A stretch of DNA of 64,000 nucleotides from Haliotis cracherodii (Eukaryota), in NCBI RefSeq assembly GCF_022045235.1, contig NW_027266280.1:5208001-5272000 (forward strand), given 5' to 3'. This document shows, one piece after another, positions 20,686-58,043 of this stretch. Below the pieces are notes generated by a model that was not told the origin of the DNA, made no database searches, and was given only the letters and a program-made list of their open reading frames with translations. Both the position numbers and the translations under genes were made by a program. Position 1 is the first letter of the stretch; each line of letters starts with the position of its first letter.

Positions 20686-20765
20686 TATAAAAACTGCCCC
20701 TGTATCCCGTTGAAGCAGTACCTCGTCTGCCTTTGTAGTGAACCGAAGCATCTTTCAGGACTGAG
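20686..20765 (+). promoter_or_regulatory. G1 TATA box, Inr and non-coding exon 1
   Basis: TATAAAAA at 20686; CAGT with the A at 20717 (+31); donor GAG|GTAAGC after 20765. Confidence 0.7.
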
Positions 20766-21115
20766 GTAAGCACTCGTTCATAGCTTGTTAGTATTTTAAG
20801 CAATGAAAACAAAACGCTTTTTAAATGGCTTGAATTCAATTAACATTATTTTTTTGTGTGTTCTTCTATTCGTGTATGTTATAACGTTATAATATCATTA
20901 AAAATAGTTTTTCTGGTCCGAGGAATAATCATTCGTGCATAGTCGCTATGTTCTATGGTAATTATTATGTTAACACCGTATTCAATTTTTGAGCGATTTA
21001 TTAAATTATTGAATTAATCCAAATAATCCTAAATTGCTATCACATTCCACTCAGTGATCTAGCTGTAGCTGAATGTACAGCACATAACTGAAACTCTGTA
21101 TTTTCCCTTCAGAAC

Positions 21116-21182
21116 ATGAACAGCCTTCCTATCATCTTCCTCGTGTCGGTATGTTGTGCACTCGGGTATAGCAGAACAATGA
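21116..21182 (+). CDS. G1 signal-peptide exon (MNSLPIIFLVSVCCALGYSRTM)
   Basis: Acceptor TTTTCCCTTCAG at 21112, ATG at 21116, hydrophobic core with CC, phase-1 donor GTGAGT at 21183. Confidence 0.85.
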
Positions 21183-21618
21183 GTGAGTATAATTCTTCGA
21201 TATATCATTTACATCTGTACATCGATATTTGATCGTTATTCAGAACCATGACGGACAGGGTGGTGCTGTATTTATGCAGGTTTCTCTGAGGGGTGATGGG
21301 ACTTGTGTTCCCTTGCTGTTATGACCTGCTGTCGACAGTTTGAAACCCACGTTCACTCCCAATACGTCCCCATACTGGATTTCATATTTACGAATGTGTT
21401 CCTTGAACACAAATTATTTTCACTACCATATTCCACTTTTAGGATAGACTCATCTCTGATGTTAATACCTTTTACAGCAAGAAACATATCCTTTCTATTT
21501 AGTTAGTACCTCATGATATTAATAATATTTTGACAATAATTTGTGTTGACACAACGAATGTCGAACTCTATGTATGTAACTATTCACTGAAAACATGCTT
21601 CGCTCATTATTCGACCAG

Positions 21619-21646
21619 GAAACAGACGTTTTGTACAATCCCTACA
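21619..21646 (+). CDS. G1 candidate mini-exon (R-NRRFVQSL); 28 nt, out of frame with the strong downstream acceptor
   Basis: CCAG|GA AAC AGA CGT TTT ... |GTACGT; same position and RxRRF motif as the G2 and G4 mini-exons. Confidence 0.5.
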
Positions 21647-21901
21647 GTACGTATACTATTTGATGTAAACTATTTTGACGAGTAAGCTGTTTTTAACATT
21701 CGATATGTGCATGGTCCAGAGCCCTAAATCAAATGCCCAGTGCACCGCACAAGCAATTAACTCTAGAGCATCTTTGAAAACAGTTGCTGTCATCCGAAAT
21801 TCTCCTTTCACACGAACTTAACGTTGATTGCCAACACAGCTTCCGAACAACTTCCGAATACCTTGTGATTTTGACTCCGAGTGTTTTCAGCGCCGGACAC
21901 A

Positions 21902-22164
21902 TTTGTTGTTTGTTGTTTAACGCCGCACTCAGCAATATTCCAGCTATATGACGGCGGTCTGTAAATAATCGAGTCTGGGAAAGACAATGCAGTGATTGAT
22001 ACCATGAGCATCGATCAAGGCAATTGGGATACGATGACATGCATCAACCAAGTCAGCGAGCCTGACCACCCGATCCCGTTAGTCGCCTTTTACGACAAGC
22101 ATAGTCGCCCTTTACGGCAAGCATGGGTTGCTGAAGACCTATTGTAACCCAGATATTCACGGGT
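21902..22164 (-). mobile_element. Family A element in a G1 intron
   Basis: Full-length consensus match. Confidence 0.9.
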
Positions 22165-22427
22165 ACCAAAGTCGTCAATACAAACATCTGACCAACAAAA
22201 TAAAAGGTTGCTCAATGGCCCCTAAATGTATTTTTAAGTGCACAACTGGAGTATGACTGATGACTTTATTAAACTCTAAACGGAGTCAACTGTCTGACCT
22301 CGCCCAAACATTTAGCTTAATATTTCCAACATTCCTCCTTTGGATTTGATGCAGATGTGAATGTACATCTTCTTCATCTCCATGTCGATGTATAACATTA
22401 TCTTAAGATGTCATTTCTCATTTACAG

Positions 22428-22834
22428 ATACGCTATGGAGTGCAAATCCAAATCAAATGGGCATACCTATTAATCAGGGACAACCTCGGGGTCAAGGTCA
22501 GGTGAACCAGTACGCACCGTCATTGCCAGGTCAAAGTCCAATTCAAGGTCAAGTTCCCAATCAGCCATTGATGCCTCAATATGGTGGTTTCCCTGGCTTC
22601 CTCAACAACCCTCAGGCCTTGGCGCAGTTCCAGCAGTTCCTGCGCTACATGATGATGAGAAACCGGCGCCTTGTTCCAGGGCAAAGCTTCACCAACGACC
22701 CCAGGTTCCCCGGGGGCAGGGGTATTGTAACAAGAGGGGATGGGAGTGATGGGACGGTGGTCAGCCCTGATGGGACGGTGACATCTGTTGACGGTTCTGA
22801 CATCTCAAGAGAAGGAGGGATATTTGGCCGTTAA
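22428..22834 (+). CDS. G1 terminal exon: Q/G/P-rich region plus conserved DGSD domain (157-aa protein without the mini-exon)
   Basis: Acceptor TTTCTCATTTACAG in phase 1; ends ..FPGGRGIVTRGDGSDGTVVSPDGTVTSVDGSDISREGGIFGR*; AATAAA at 23058. Confidence 0.9.
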
Positions 22835-55199: not shown

Positions 55200-55430
55200 A
55201 GCGGAGGGGTGGCCCAGAGGTTAAAGCGTTCGCTCGTTCGCTCGTTCCCCCAAGTTTGATTACCCCCATAGGTACAATGTGTGAAGCCGATTTCTGGTGT
55301 TCTCTGCTATGATATTGCTGGAATATTGCTAAAAGCGGCATAAAACCATACTCACTCACTTACTCACTTACTCACTCACTCACTCACTCACTCACTCACT
55401 CACTCACTCACTCACTCACTCACTCACGCA
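55200..55430 (+). mobile_element. Family B SINE with expanded (CACT)n tail
   Basis: Diverged head; long tetranucleotide tail. Confidence 0.8.
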
Positions 55431-55946
55431 CTAGGAATGTTCTCCTTTTGAGCACGCACTTTCTACGAAGATTTCGAAAATCTTCACGCAGGCTCACAGT
55501 ATTTAAGGCGCAAGTAAAGCTTTTAAAAATGTTCATGTTAGACCAACTTGACTTGCCTTTGCATGTGTTTATGACGGATGCGACTGGTAGGGAAGGGGGT
55601 GCTCACCTGTTCCCGATGATCTGATATCCCCCCAATTGATCGTGATTCATAAACAAATATTTTCGGGAACACCTGGTGTCATCACTGATTTTCAGTGGTC
55701 CATCCATATAATTTACACAGCTATTTAGCCCTTTCAGCCAAATGGAATCTGTTTCGGCGGATACTCAAGATTGGTTATTCTCTTGACATTATATATTGTA
55801 TTTGATTACGGATTCGTAATACTTTCAACAGATATTCTTTATGATTATGAAAGGGTTTTGCCGATGATATTTACCTTATTGTGCTATTTTCATAGACCTT
55901 CCAGCCTTTAGGTATCGCTCGATGCCGTCCTTTATCATTTACACAG

Positions 55947-55982
55947 GTGTTTTTAGTGGTAGGAGAACAACCTCAGGGTCTA
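55947..55982 (+). CDS. G5 mini-exon (R-VFSGRRTTSGS), 36 nt, or 87 nt if the acceptor at 55895 is used
   Basis: CATTTACACAG acceptor and GTGAGT donor; both versions are phase 1-1 and open. Confidence 0.55.
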
Positions 55983-56513
55983 GTGAGTATGGCTGCGATA
56001 CCTTGATCTTTTCCATTCAAATTTAATGAACTTGAAACTAATTACATTAAAAGCGAACCGTTTGACAATACGGATCTGCTGTCGGCAATTAATTTCATGA
56101 TATGGGGTGAAACCTCTACATCTGCAATACTGATAGTGAAATATGCAACATTTTTTTACATAATACTAACTTAATTACTCGCCGAAGTTTTGTGATCCGC
56201 GAGTACGCACAAACACAAGTCTTTACAACATAAATGTCATTTACTTACCAATCATAGGGACCGTTTCGATAGTTTAAGGCATCACAATGGTGAGTTTATA
56301 TTTAACGTCGCATCGGCATCATTTCAGACATATAGCGAGAAAATAAAATAACCAAGCTTTAGTAAATATGAAATATATTAAACATGAAACAGCTTTTGTC
56401 AGTTTCAGGCAAGTAGGATGTTCTTGGCAGCAAAGCTATTTCTCAAATTAAAAGATATTCAGTTGATGTTTATTTTCATATACAACTAAATTTCATATAT
56501 TTTTCTGTTAAAG

Positions 56514-57176
56514 GTATTCGCTCACTCCTACCCCAAAGCGTTGCCTTTAAGCTGCTTCTACTAAAACCACCCGCATCCAGAGGCAGCTTGTTTCCACAAG
56601 GGAGAAACCCAGCAAGGAGACAAGTAGGATCCTCATCCGGAGGTCCATTTATTCCATCTGATCCCATCGGAGGCCCTGGCTTTGTGCACCCTCTACTTGA
56701 CCCTAATTATGGCAACAGCCACAACGGATTTAATGGCTTTGGTGGTTATTCCGAGACCATCTCGCCAACAGGTTACCCCGGAGATATGTCTGGATCTGGC
56801 ACATTTGGTGGTCCTTCTCCAGGGTCTCCGGGTTTCTCTGGAGGAAGTCCTCTTGGTTTGTTAGGTGTTGATTCCACAGGGTTTCCTGGAAACCTGATGG
56901 GTTCGGGGGGTTTACTTGGCGGAATGTCAAGCACTGGAAATAAGGAAACAGGATTTCCAGGACTACATCTTGAACAAACTTCAGGTGGGTTTGGACAAGG
57001 CCCTGTTGGAGATTTCTTTGCATCGGGCCAGAACGGAGGTCTTCTCGGGTTAGATGTGATGCCTGGTAGTCTTACAGGAGGTTTTCCTGGTGGAGCTCCA
57101 TCACTACTTGGACACTCTGAGGGTTCACAAGGATTTGGCATGTCTATGGGATTGCCTGGCGAGCTTCCTGGCACAG
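56514..57176 (+). CDS. G5 Gly-rich internal exon (GFPG/GLLG motifs)
   Basis: Acceptor TTTTCTGTTAAAG, in frame with ORF 56588-57196; phase-1 donor ACAG|GTATGG; 663 nt. Confidence 0.8.
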
Positions 57177-57208
57177 GTATGGGAAAGACAGGGTAGTGTT
57201 TTGAGAGT

Positions 57209-57369
57209 GAGTGATGTATGGTTTTCGGCGCTTTTAGCAATACTCCAGCAACATCACGGCGGGGGACACTTGAAATGAGCTTCACACATTGTACCCATGT
57301 CGGGAATCGAACCCGGGTCTTCGGCGTGACGAGCGAACGTTTTAACCACTAGGCTACCCGACCGCCCCC
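57209..57369 (-). mobile_element. Family B SINE with 12-bp TSD, in the last intron of G5
   Basis: TGTTTTGAGAGT at 57197-57208 and 57370-57381. Confidence 0.92.
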
Positions 57370-57546
57370 TGTTTTGAGAGTAAGGCATGAAGTTACCTTC
57401 GTGGTACTGGTGCAGGGTTAATATTTAGTAATGTTGGTGTATCAGTTGACAGATCGTTGTTTGCAAGTTATCTCTAAGATGTACACAAACCTTGAAAAGC
57501 GTCAATGTTATCGCTTCGAACTAAAACATAAGTTTCACATTTTCAG

Positions 57547-58043
57547 AACAACAAAGCCTTAACAAAGGGATGGCAGTGAATATTTTGCGGGAAACGTCCC
57601 CAACCTCTACGCCACAAATGGCAAAAGTTGCTCCGACGAACCCTGGCCAGTCTTTTACCTCTGGACCCGTAACATCCCCGGTAAATAGGAGTAAAATACA
57701 AAAAAATATTCAAAACCCGCCACGTCCAAAAGTGCAGCAGAGATTACAAAATTCTCGTCAAACTGGAGCCGGTAAAGGGCCAATTAGAAGAATCCCGGAA
57801 TCTGCTGTGGGAGGTATCAATCGCCCTGCATCAATCAGAGGTGTACAGCCAATCATTCCACCTATCATACCATCAGGTGTTCCGCCAGTCATTCGGCCAG
57901 GAACCGTACTTCCACCAAGTGCTTTGCTGCCAACTGGAGGAGTGGTGCTTCGTGTTGATGGCAGCGATGCTGTTGTGGCGTCTCCCGATGGTGTAGAAAC
58001 GACCGTAGATGGAACTGACTTCAGTCAAGAGGTAGTTGTCTGA
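57547..58043 (+). CDS. G5 terminal exon: basic P/R-rich region plus conserved domain (protein about 423-440 aa)
   Basis: Acceptor CATTTTCAG in phase 1; ends ..RPGTVLPPSALLPTGGVVLRVDGSDAVVASPDGVETTVDGTDFSQEVVV*. Confidence 0.88.

What the first reader, a model, noticed from the sequence alone, without database searches (positions are those of the whole stretch)
20686..58043. Tandem array of five secreted low-complexity proteins sharing an unrecognised ~50-aa C-terminal DGSD domain
Seen: five same-strand genes end in alignable tails. G1 PGQSFTNDPRFPGGRGIVTRGDGSDGTVVSPDGTVTSVDGSD; G2 PGMQITNDPRFPGGGVVTAGDGRDGTVVNRYGMRATVDGTD; G3 PGQVIPSNLLIPGGGVVLAGDGSDATVAGPAGSFSIDGGD; G4 KGEYVPPKGLFPGGYVINADGSDAEVRDIYGRLHSIDGG; G5 PGTVLPPSALLPTGGVVLRVDGSDAVVASPDGVETTVDGTD. 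Invariant positions are G, P, G-x-V, DGxD, V, G and [VI]DG, with no Cys. The bodies are unalignable and differ in chemistry (Q/G/P, Q/Y, P/Q, polyQ, Gly-rich then basic). Each gene has a signal-peptide exon. Established: secreted repetitive low-complexity proteins are typical of mollusc shell matrix and other structural secretions. Inference: a modular system in which a small beta-rich acidic domain (assembly or Ca2+/mineral-binding tag) carries interchangeable disordered cargo. I do not recognise the domain as a named family.
Basis: partly seen in the sequence, partly recalled or inferred. Interest (0 to 1): 0.92.

Follow-up and report, generated by a model that had tools for sequence, protein, structure and literature searches.

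The report
Abalone nacre protein family, shared tail
A tandem cluster of abalone genes encodes secreted, disordered shell (nacre) matrix proteins that all end in the same small, acidic, unnamed folded domain; three were already listed as 'uncharacterized' shell proteins, but I found no earlier description of them as one family.

Summary
The window comes from Haliotis cracherodii (black abalone), contig C17. It carries five + strand genes. Each has a signal-peptide exon followed by phase-1 introns, and each ends in the same domain of about 50 aa (65-70 aa with a preceding helix in four of the five). A sixth copy, an inverted duplicate of G4, lies about 370 kb away.

Pfam, PDB sequence search and fold search give no named family. 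An exhaustive profile search of 1.84 billion proteins found the domain only in Haliotis, in the vent snail Gigantopelta aegis and a near relative of unrecorded source, and in two unplaced sequences.

The decisive evidence comes from the supplements of a published H. laevigata shell proteome (PMC6003135). They hold MS/MS peptides of the orthologues of G2, G3 and G4, including peptides from inside the domain and one C-terminal peptide. The matching transcripts come from mantle tissue. The G3 orthologue is a nacre-only 'major' protein. That paper calls them 'uncharacterized' and treats them separately.

The domain is acidic (pI 4.0-4.9) and the bodies are mostly basic. Synonymous sites between paralogues are saturated while the amino acids are kept. 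AlphaFold2 (pLDDT 76) predicts a helix plus two beta-hairpins with DGxD at the turns.

So the shell-matrix reading is supported. What the domain does (assembly handle or Ca2+/mineral binding) is untested. This is a new family of a known kind, of moderate interest.

The parts
20686..20765 (+). G1 putative promoter (TATAAAA at 20686) and a putative non-coding first exon ending at a GT donor (20766)
   Evidence: Read from the sequence. No RNA evidence was obtained for this exon, so it is inferred.
21116..21182 (+). G1 signal-peptide exon (MNSLPIIFLVSVCCALGYSRTM...), followed by a phase-1 donor GTGAGT
   Evidence: The orthologue is H. rufescens LOC124131974 (P0001, 96% identity).
22428..22834 (+). 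G1 last exon: Q/P/G/N-rich basic body, then helix plus DGxD domain (22631-22831)
28951..29023 (+). G2 signal-peptide exon
   Evidence: The spliced model equals H. cracherodii XP_071110968 (P0014) at 100%.
29445..29492 (+). G2 48-nt micro-exon with phase 1 on both sides
30266..30621 (+). G2 last exon: Q/S/L/Y-rich body, then helix plus DGxD domain (30421-30618). The orthologue H. laevigata idb_54301 is found in nacre, and one domain peptide also appears in a prismatic-layer peptide table.
36222..36279 (+). G3 signal-peptide exon
   Evidence: Contigs of two runs join 36279 to 37086 with GT..AG ends.
37086..37795 (+). G3 last exon: P/Q-rich basic body, then DGxD domain (37595-37792). The contigs run on to between 38011 and the end of the laid stretch at 38100. 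The orthologue H. laevigata idb_16318 is a nacre-only 'major' shell protein.
   Evidence: The model equals XP_071111066 (P0006) at 100%.
43552..43618 (+). G4 signal-peptide exon, followed by a phase-1 donor GTAAGT
45202..45854 (+). G4 last exon: polyQ/Q-rich basic body, then helix plus DGxD domain (45654-45851). Orthologues H. laevigata idb_28907 and idb_36084 occur in nacre and in the prismatic layer, and their C-terminal peptide LHSIDGGVFQA is identical to the G4 end.
54518..54593 (+). G5 signal-peptide exon (MTYWRFILCTLVFCYEAHT...)
   Evidence: The model equals XP_071110958 (P0007) at 100%.
56514..57176 (+). G5 Gly/Ser/Leu/Pro-rich middle exon with phase 1 on both sides
57547..58043 (+). 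G5 last exon: basic P/S/Q-rich segment (pI 12), then DGxD domain (57843-58040). A Pro-rich stretch replaces the helix.

Best explanation
This is a lineage-restricted family of abalone shell (chiefly nacre) matrix proteins, made in the mantle and encoded by a tandem gene cluster.

Each gene has the same plan. A signal-peptide exon comes first. A phase-1 intron follows. Then come one or more exons for a variable, disordered, mostly basic Q/P/G-rich body. The last exon ends in a conserved acidic module of about 50 aa. In G1-G4 an amphipathic helix precedes it, giving 65-70 aa in all. The module is predicted to fold as two beta-hairpins whose turns carry the DGxD motifs.

Shown: secretion signals, splicing of G3, presence of the G2, G3 and G4 orthologues in shell, retention of the domain in the deposited protein, and purifying selection on the domain.

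Inferred: the domain is a common handle that brings chemically different disordered bodies into the same organic matrix. It would do this by docking to a shared partner (another matrix protein, chitin, or the family's own basic bodies) and/or by Ca2+-bridged contacts of its Asp-rich turns. The bodies would supply gel-forming or space-filling properties.
For: Identity of the genome: P0014 and P0006 (H. cracherodii RefSeq proteins) match the window at 100%, and the contig length of 10,804,366 agrees.

Gene models: spliced models reproduce the annotated proteins exactly, and all introns are phase 1. The G3 signal-peptide exon is joined to its last exon in contigs of two runs, with GT..AG ends. 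One sample of a study holds 81% of the words of the G3 last exon and 3' end, while two other samples of that study hold none. This would fit sample-specific expression.

Shell proteome: the supplements of PMC6003135 hold MS/MS peptides for three orthologues. For G2: MYVPGMQIR, FPGGGIVTAGDGR and FPGGGIVTAGDGRDGTVVNR. For G4: (K)GLFPGGYVISADGSDAEVR, LHSIDGGVFQA and ALMALLK. For G3: HLQEQMKPFNPK and others, plus the full sequence of idb_16318. They occur in nacre cleaned by hypochlorite and by sand-blasting. idb_16318 is one of 77 'major' proteins and is nacre-only. The 'idb_' entries come from the mantle transcriptome.

The domain: 11 invariant columns. pS is 0.61-0.94 against pN 0.22-0.49, and dN/dS is 0.16-0.58 where it can be computed. 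Orthologue identity is as high or higher in the domain than in the body for four of five pairs (G2 about equal). Domain pI is 4.05-4.89; the body segments have pI 8-12, apart from the near-neutral Gly-rich exon of G5 (pI 6.05). AF2 gives pLDDT 76 and pTM 0.57, with a helix and four strands and DGxD at the turns.

Restricted, unnamed family: only 12 hits in 1.84 billion representatives, and no Pfam family.
Against: No experiment or computation here shows what the domain binds. It has no canonical Ca2+-binding motif and no Pfam match. The homodimer prediction gave no verdict. Fold matches are insignificant.

G1 and G5 orthologue strings were not found in the shell proteome text that is held. Several of those files are truncated, and the H. 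laevigata sequences may differ. The G2 and G4 orthologues are 'minor' proteins (<0.2%) in that study.

The sequencing runs are coded and their RNA status is a guess, so the tissue of expression in this species is not established.
Confidence: 0.72

Rival explanations
1. The tail is mainly a Ca2+/aragonite-binding module. The Asp residues at the two DGxD hairpin turns coordinate Ca2+ or bind crystal faces, so that the family modulates nucleation or tablet growth directly.
For: The domain is acidic, with 5-7 acidic residues, most of them in or next to the DGxD turns. The proteins occur in both acid-soluble and acid-insoluble nacre matrix. From general knowledge, acidic modules are common mineral binders in shell proteins.
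Against: The net charge is modest, and the domain is far from the very acidic (pI 3-4) Asp-rich shell proteins. No EF-hand, DxDxDG or other known Ca2+ motif was found by Pfam. DG pairs are also simply good beta-turn formers, so their conservation may be structural.
Confidence: 0.25
2. The acidic tail is an intramolecular solubility or secretion aid. It neutralises the basic, aggregation-prone Q/P-rich body during transit and in the extrapallial fluid, and it has no specific partner in the shell.
For: Tail and body carry opposite charge in G1-G4 and in the last exon of G5. The family has no Cys and the domains are short.
Against: A mere counter-charge would not need 11 invariant positions and a conserved predicted fold kept across Haliotis and Peltospiridae. 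The tail is retained in the deposited protein.
Confidence: 0.12
3. The proteins are general mantle mucus or extrapallial secretions that get trapped in the shell incidentally. The cluster is not a dedicated biomineralisation system.
For: The G2 and G4 orthologues are low-abundance in the shell. G1 and G5 were not detected. Shell proteomes do contain bystanders such as actin (PMC6003135).
Against: The G3 orthologue is a major, nacre-only component. The peptides recur in every nacre preparation, including sand-blasted pure nacre. In every protein list displayed, the entries stand without a 'comp...' entry of the hemolymph/tentacle database beside them, whereas many other proteins carry one.
Confidence: 0.1

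Closest known systems
H. laevigata shell proteins idb_16318, idb_54301, idb_28907/idb_36084 (Mann et al. 2018, PMC6003135)
   Same: They are direct orthologues of G3, G2 and G4/G4b. Identified peptides lie inside the domain, and the G4 C-terminal peptide is identical.
   Different: They come from another Haliotis species. The paper lists them separately as 'uncharacterized'. It notes no shared domain, no gene cluster and no relatives outside Haliotis.
Gigantopelta aegis LOC121368135 (four isoforms) and a near-identical ENA protein, P0010
   Same: They are small proteins with a hydrophobic N-terminus and a low-complexity body, ending in the same PG...PGG...DGxD...[VI]DGxD domain.
   Different: Only a single gene was found in that species. 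They belong to a different order (Neomphalina, vent snails). I could not check whether they occur in the shell, because no supplement of PMC11871041 is held.
Shematrin and KRMP families of pearl oysters (from general knowledge)
   Same: They work alike: multigene families of secreted shell proteins in which repetitive low-complexity bodies vary while short terminal parts stay conserved.
   Different: There is no sequence relation: none appeared among the 12 hits of the exhaustive profile search. They are bivalve families, mostly of the prismatic layer or framework. Their conserved ends are short basic motifs, not a predicted folded acidic domain.
Vertebrate SCPP gene cluster (enamel, dentin, milk and saliva proteins; from general knowledge)
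   Same: It is an analogous architecture: a tandem cluster of small secreted disordered P/Q-rich mineralisation proteins, with the signal peptide on its own exon.
   Different: There is no homology. SCPPs share the signal peptide and a phosphorylation motif rather than a C-terminal folded domain. Here all introns are phase 1.
Pfam DUF6799 (PF20606)
   Same: A short stretch (VVSPDGTVTSVDGSDIS) resembles part of the profile.
   Different: Only 2 of 14 family members hit it, at 15-16 bits against a cut-off of 26.8. The family here is not a member.

Membership tests
Mollusc shell matrix protein (operational definition) | The protein is identified by MS/MS in cleaned, demineralised shell | tested here: met
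   Met for the orthologues of G2, G3 and G4 in H. laevigata nacre, with some in the prismatic layer. Not found for G1 or G5. Not tested in H. cracherodii itself.
Mollusc shell matrix protein (operational definition) | N-terminal secretion signal | tested here: met
   Each gene has a separate first coding exon with Met plus a hydrophobic core. This was a hydrophobicity heuristic only; no SignalP tool was available.
Mollusc shell matrix protein (operational definition) | Expression in mantle | tested here: inconclusive
   The H. laevigata orthologues come from the mantle transcriptome assembly. For this species there are only coded runs of guessed RNA type: the G3 stretch (last exon and 3' end) is held by one sample and not by two others of the same study.
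Pfam DUF6799 (PF20606) | Score at or above the gathering cut-off (26.8 bits) | tested here: not met
   The best score is 15.8 bits (E 0.012), and only the G1 orthologues hit, 2 of 14 members.
SH3-like small beta-barrels (Tudor, KOW) | Significant structural superposition on a solved member | tested here: inconclusive
   Foldseek gives a best E of 0.067, with Tudor and ribosomal protein L2 domains among the weak rows. VIA-align against 48,161 chains gives a best Z of 3.6 and none at 5 or above. PDB sequence search gives Spt5 KOW at E 3.2. The model has pLDDT 76.
Canonical Ca2+-binding motifs (EF-hand, thrombospondin type 3, FG-GAP DxDxDG loops) | Match to the family profile | tested here: not met
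   No such Pfam family appears at E <= 1 for any of 14 members. By eye, DGxDG[TS]V does not fit the EF-hand loop.
Known named shell protein families (shematrin, KRMP, Pif, lustrin, perlucin, etc.) | Detectable sequence homology | tested here: not met
   An exhaustive HMMER profile search of 1.84 billion representatives returned only 12 proteins, and none carries such a name.

The most novel reading that the evidence does not exclude
The helix-plus-two-DGxD-hairpin module is a previously unrecognised folded extracellular assembly domain of gastropod shell matrices, possibly Ca2+-dependent. It would predate the split of Vetigastropoda and Neomphalina. It would act as a universal address tag that delivers interchangeable disordered bodies into nacre. 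That would make abalone nacre assembly testable with a single small domain, by partner pull-down, tail swaps or tail deletion.
Probability: 0.22. Interest if true: 0.62.

Novelty: new member of a known kind. Interest (0 to 1): 0.45.

Why it matters
Most mollusc shell proteomes are lists of 'uncharacterized' disordered proteins with no handle for experiments. Here several such abalone nacre proteins turn out to be one gene family. They are arranged as a tandem cluster and share a small conserved domain that is probably folded and stays on the deposited protein.

This gives a concrete target. One can make the 50-70 aa domain, solve its structure, find what it binds, and swap or delete it. The aim would be to learn how disordered matrix proteins are recruited into nacre.

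The cluster also gives an example of how shell proteins might diversify: a conserved end with variable bodies, and phase-1 introns throughout that would allow exons to be added. It corrects misleading automatic names, such as 'POU domain class 6 transcription factor 2-like' and 'collagen type I alpha 1b-like'.

Tried and rejected
Pfam on the exons and on 14 family members gave nothing above cut-off. DUF6799 is rejected.

PDB sequence search gave only Spt5 KOW at E 3.2. Foldseek against the PDB and VIA-align wide gave no significant fold: best E 0.067 and best Z 3.6. The ESM Atlas search was blank.

Complex prediction on a homodimer of the G1 domain scored 0.01 and gave no verdict. It counts neither for nor against binding.

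The source organisms of P0008, P0010 and P0012 therefore could not be looked up. A word-indexed search with P0012 found only P0012 itself.

Paper searches for peptide strings and LOC/XP identifiers in main texts found nothing. The main text of the H. asinina proteome paper (PMC2989941) holds none of the motifs. No supplements of the Chrysomallon/Gigantopelta proteome paper are held.

G1 and G5 strings were not found in the H. laevigata supplements.

The 1089-aa repeat ORF next to the cluster looked at first like a relative because of its N-[IVL]-DG-F repeats. It is not: hhalign probability is 0.1% and BLASTP E is 0.09 against P0012.

The domain tree is too weakly supported to order the duplications.

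Searches used single exons by reference or database protein ids. Exons were joined only inside scripts, to compare with the annotated proteins.

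
Full report
**What is there**

Aligned, they share 11 invariant columns: G, P, G, V, D, G, D, V, G, D, G. The mean column identity is 51%. 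The domains contain no Cys.

A loose form of the motif, DG.D.{11,14}[VI]DG, occurs exactly five times in all six reading frames of the window, each time in these exons. A profile of the tails, searched over the whole 1.18-Gb genome in six frames, finds six loci at E 1e-24 to 1e-32 and nothing else at E <= 0.01.

**Organism and gene models**

The best protein matches are Haliotis proteins. The H. cracherodii RefSeq proteins XP_071110968 (P0014), XP_071111066 (P0006) and XP_071110958 (P0007) are reproduced at 100% by spliced models from the window. The contig length equals that on record for those proteins. The window is therefore black abalone, contig C17:5208001-5272000.

The coding exons are:

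| Gene | Coding exons |
|---|---|
| G1 | 21116-21182, 22428-22834 |
| G2 | 28951-29023, 29445-29492, 30266-30621 |
| G3 | 36222-36279, 37086-37795 |
| G4 | 43552-43618, 45202-45854 |
| G5 | 54518-54593, 56514-57176, 57547-58043 |

Every intron lies in phase 1. As a result, the G2 micro-exon and the G5 Gly-rich exon are symmetric and could be inserted or lost without breaking the frame.

Each first coding exon encodes a Met followed by a hydrophobic core. Downstream of it lies a stretch that ends at a GT donor, which may be a non-coding first exon of G1. That is read from the sequence only.

Exons were joined only inside scripts, to compare them with the annotated proteins.

**A sixth gene**

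C17:~4.833-4.838 Mb carries an inverted copy of G4, including its signal-peptide exon and flanks. The copy spans at least 4.6 kb at 90-93% nucleotide identity, and the last-exon proteins are 94% identical. At 7-10% divergence this is a true paralogue, here called G4b, and not a haplotig. H. laevigata also has two G4-like transcripts.

**Transcription**

Contigs of two public runs, from relatives that differ from the window at about 3% of letters, join 36279 to 37086 with GT..AG ends. This links the G3 signal-peptide exon to its last exon. A run differing at only 5 of 928 letters, presumably the same species, has a contig that starts at the acceptor site.

In that run's study, one sample holds 81% of the sampled words of the G3 stretch searched (last exon and 3' end) and two others hold none. 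This would fit sample-specific expression. The run types are guessed and all names are coded, so the tissue is unknown.

**What the proteins are**

The decisive evidence is in the supplements of Mann et al. 2018 (PMC6003135), a proteome of H. laevigata nacre and prismatic layer. The peptide tables contain:

- **G2 orthologue (idb_54301):** MYVPGMQIR, FPGGGIVTAGDGR and FPGGGIVTAGDGRDGTVVNR.
- **G4 orthologues (idb_28907 and idb_36084):** (K)GLFPGGYVISADGSDAEVR, ALMALLK and the C-terminal peptide LHSIDGGVFQA.
- **G3 orthologue (idb_16318):** HLQEQMKPFNPK(PYYGAPLSDWK). Its full sequence is printed and ends in ...PGGGVVVAGDGSDATVAGPTGSYSIDGGDVDRVSLV.

The peptides recur in acid-soluble and acid-insoluble nacre prepared by all three cleaning methods: hypochlorite, hypochlorite plus ultrasound, and sand-blasting. 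Some also occur in the prismatic layer. idb_16318 is one of the 77 'major' proteins, defined as at least 0.2% of the total, and has no entry in any prismatic-layer column of Table 1. The 'idb_' entries come from the mantle transcriptome.

Three points follow:

- At least three of the five genes encode genuine shell-matrix proteins.
- The C-terminal domain is not cleaved off. It is present in the deposited protein.
- The paper lists these proteins separately as 'uncharacterized' and does not mention a shared domain.

Strings expected from G1 and G5 orthologues were not found. This is weak negative evidence, because several files are truncated and the H. laevigata sequences may differ.

**The domain**

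The conserved core is PG-x7-9-[FLI]-P-G-G-x-G-[VIM]-[VF]-x3-DGxD-[GA]-x-[VI]-x4-G-x3-[ST]-[VI]-DGxD. In G1-G4 an amphipathic segment precedes it, for example FQQFLRYMMMRNRR. In G5 that segment is replaced by a Pro-rich stretch.

The domain is acidic (pI 4.05-4.89). The body segments of G1-G4 and the body part of the last exon of G5 are basic (pI 8-12). The Gly-rich middle exon of G5 is near neutral (pI 6.05). The body compositions differ:

| Gene | Most frequent residues of the body |
|---|---|
| G1 | Q, P, G, N |
| G2 | Q, S, L, Y |
| G3 | P, Q |
| G4 | 26% Q, with a polyQ run |
| G5 | 25% Gly in one exon, then a basic P/S/Q-rich segment |

Between paralogues, synonymous sites are saturated (pS 0.61-0.94) while non-synonymous change is limited (pN 0.22-0.49). 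Where dN/dS can be computed it is 0.16-0.58. Between orthologues the domain is at least as conserved as the body in four of five comparisons, for example 75% against 61% for G1 of H. cracherodii and H. asinina. For G2 the two are about equal, 98% against 99%.

AlphaFold2 on the 66-aa G2 domain, with a 12-row alignment, gives mean pLDDT 76 and pTM 0.57. It predicts one helix and four strands. The first DGxD forms the turn between strands 1 and 2. The second spans the end of strand 3, the short turn and the start of strand 4. The full mature G1 gives a disordered body and the same C-terminal elements at lower confidence.

**Is it a known family?**

- Pfam gives nothing above cut-off. The only recurring weak hit, DUF6799, is seen in 2 of 14 members at 15-16 bits against a cut-off of 26.8.
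- PDB sequence search gives only an insignificant Spt5 KOW match, E 3.2.
- Foldseek (best E 0.067) and VIA-align against 48,161 chains (best Z 3.6, none at 5 or above) list Tudor, KOW and SH3-like small barrels among their weak rows. None is significant.
- The ESM Atlas search was blank.

An exhaustive HMMER profile search of 1.84 billion cluster representatives returned only 12 proteins:

- The Haliotis genes themselves. Some carry misleading automatic names caused by their low-complexity bodies: 'POU domain, class 6, transcription factor 2-like', 'collagen, type I, alpha 1b-like' and 'austinoid biosynthesis cluster protein W-like'.
- One gene of the vent snail Gigantopelta aegis, LOC121368135, and a protein from ENA whose domain is 87% identical to it.
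- An 81-aa fragment of unknown origin.
- A 443-aa protein of unknown origin (P0012). It is built of tandem units of about 15 aa of the form FG-x-[ST]-x-[ST]-[VIM]-DG-x-D, which look like repeats of the second hairpin (E 7.6e-5).
- Two evidently spurious low-complexity or RTX-like hits.

The family is thus unnamed and, as far as these databases show, restricted to Haliotis and Peltospiridae.

**How it most likely works**

Shown: these are secreted proteins. Three of them are deposited in shell, chiefly nacre. The conserved tail is retained and is under purifying selection.

Inferred: the tail is a common handle that recruits chemically different disordered bodies into the same matrix. The opposite charge of tail and body also allows head-to-tail electrostatic association within the family.

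The alternatives are that the handle binds a protein partner, chitin, Ca2+ or the mineral surface. These cannot be separated with the present tools. A homodimer prediction gave no verdict and counts neither way. There is no canonical Ca2+ motif. The conserved DG pairs may simply be beta-turn formers.

**Comparison with known systems and verdict**

In how it works, the cluster resembles the pearl-oyster shematrin and KRMP families, which have variable repetitive bodies and conserved ends. More loosely, it resembles the vertebrate SCPP cluster. Both comparisons are from general knowledge, and neither involves sequence relationship.

I file this as a new family of a known kind, namely modular low-complexity shell matrix proteins. 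Its members were partly catalogued before. The shared domain, the tandem cluster and the peltospirid relatives appear not to have been described in the literature I could search.

Interest is moderate. It gives biomineralisation research a small, tractable domain to test, but it is not a surprise in kind.

Noticed in passing
window 60705-63974 (- strand): A 1089-aa open frame next to the cluster on the opposite strand. It holds about 12-aa DQ[AT]S[LP]R[ND]Q-type repeats (36-nt DNA period, about 20 copies) and about 50-aa M/N/G/Q-rich repeats containing N-[IVL]-DG-F. It has no Pfam family and is not related to the DGxD domain or to P0012. None of six strings taken from it occurs in the H. laevigata shell proteome supplements.
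   Followed up: partly
G000:C17:~4832900-4838000 (L004, L007): An inverted segmental duplicate of G4 ('G4b'), with its signal-peptide exon and flanks. It spans at least 4.6 kb at 90-93% nucleotide identity and lies about 370 kb upstream of the cluster. It is annotated XP_071110655 as 'POU domain, class 6, transcription factor 2-like', which is a polyQ artefact.
   Followed up: yes
window 36486-36650 and 36832-36950 (G3 intron): Two highly repeated short elements, with summed contig depth of 1e4-1e6 in all four runs laid. Loose ends next to the second element read like a tRNA start (GGGGCGGTCGGGTAGCCTAGTGGTTAAAGC), which suggests tRNA-derived SINEs.
   Followed up: no
window 43802-44160 (G4 intron): An array of imperfect direct repeats, open in three overlapping frames, with about 10-aa repeats such as HTEVPDVPGV. 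It lies in the intron between the G4 signal-peptide exon and last exon and is probably non-coding.
   Followed up: no
window 35719-36012: A triplet-type simple repeat about 200 bp upstream of the G3 start codon. It reads as poly-Thr on one strand and poly-Ser on the other.
   Followed up: no
window 22724-22732 (G1 domain): G1 carries an RGD tripeptide just before the first DGSD (TRGDGSD). H. rufescens has it too, while H. asinina has KGD. It is probably chance but could be a cell-adhesion motif.
   Followed up: no
protein P0012 (443 aa; Logan, JGI and ENA sources, organism unknown): A protein made of about 10 tandem units of the form FG-x-[ST]-x-[ST]-[VIM]-DG-x-D-x-[ST]. It hits the domain profile at E 7.6e-5. 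It suggests that the DGxD hairpin exists elsewhere as a repeat unit.
   Followed up: partly
window ~12470-12620: A run of 147 N (an assembly gap or masked stretch). It was left untouched.
   Followed up: no
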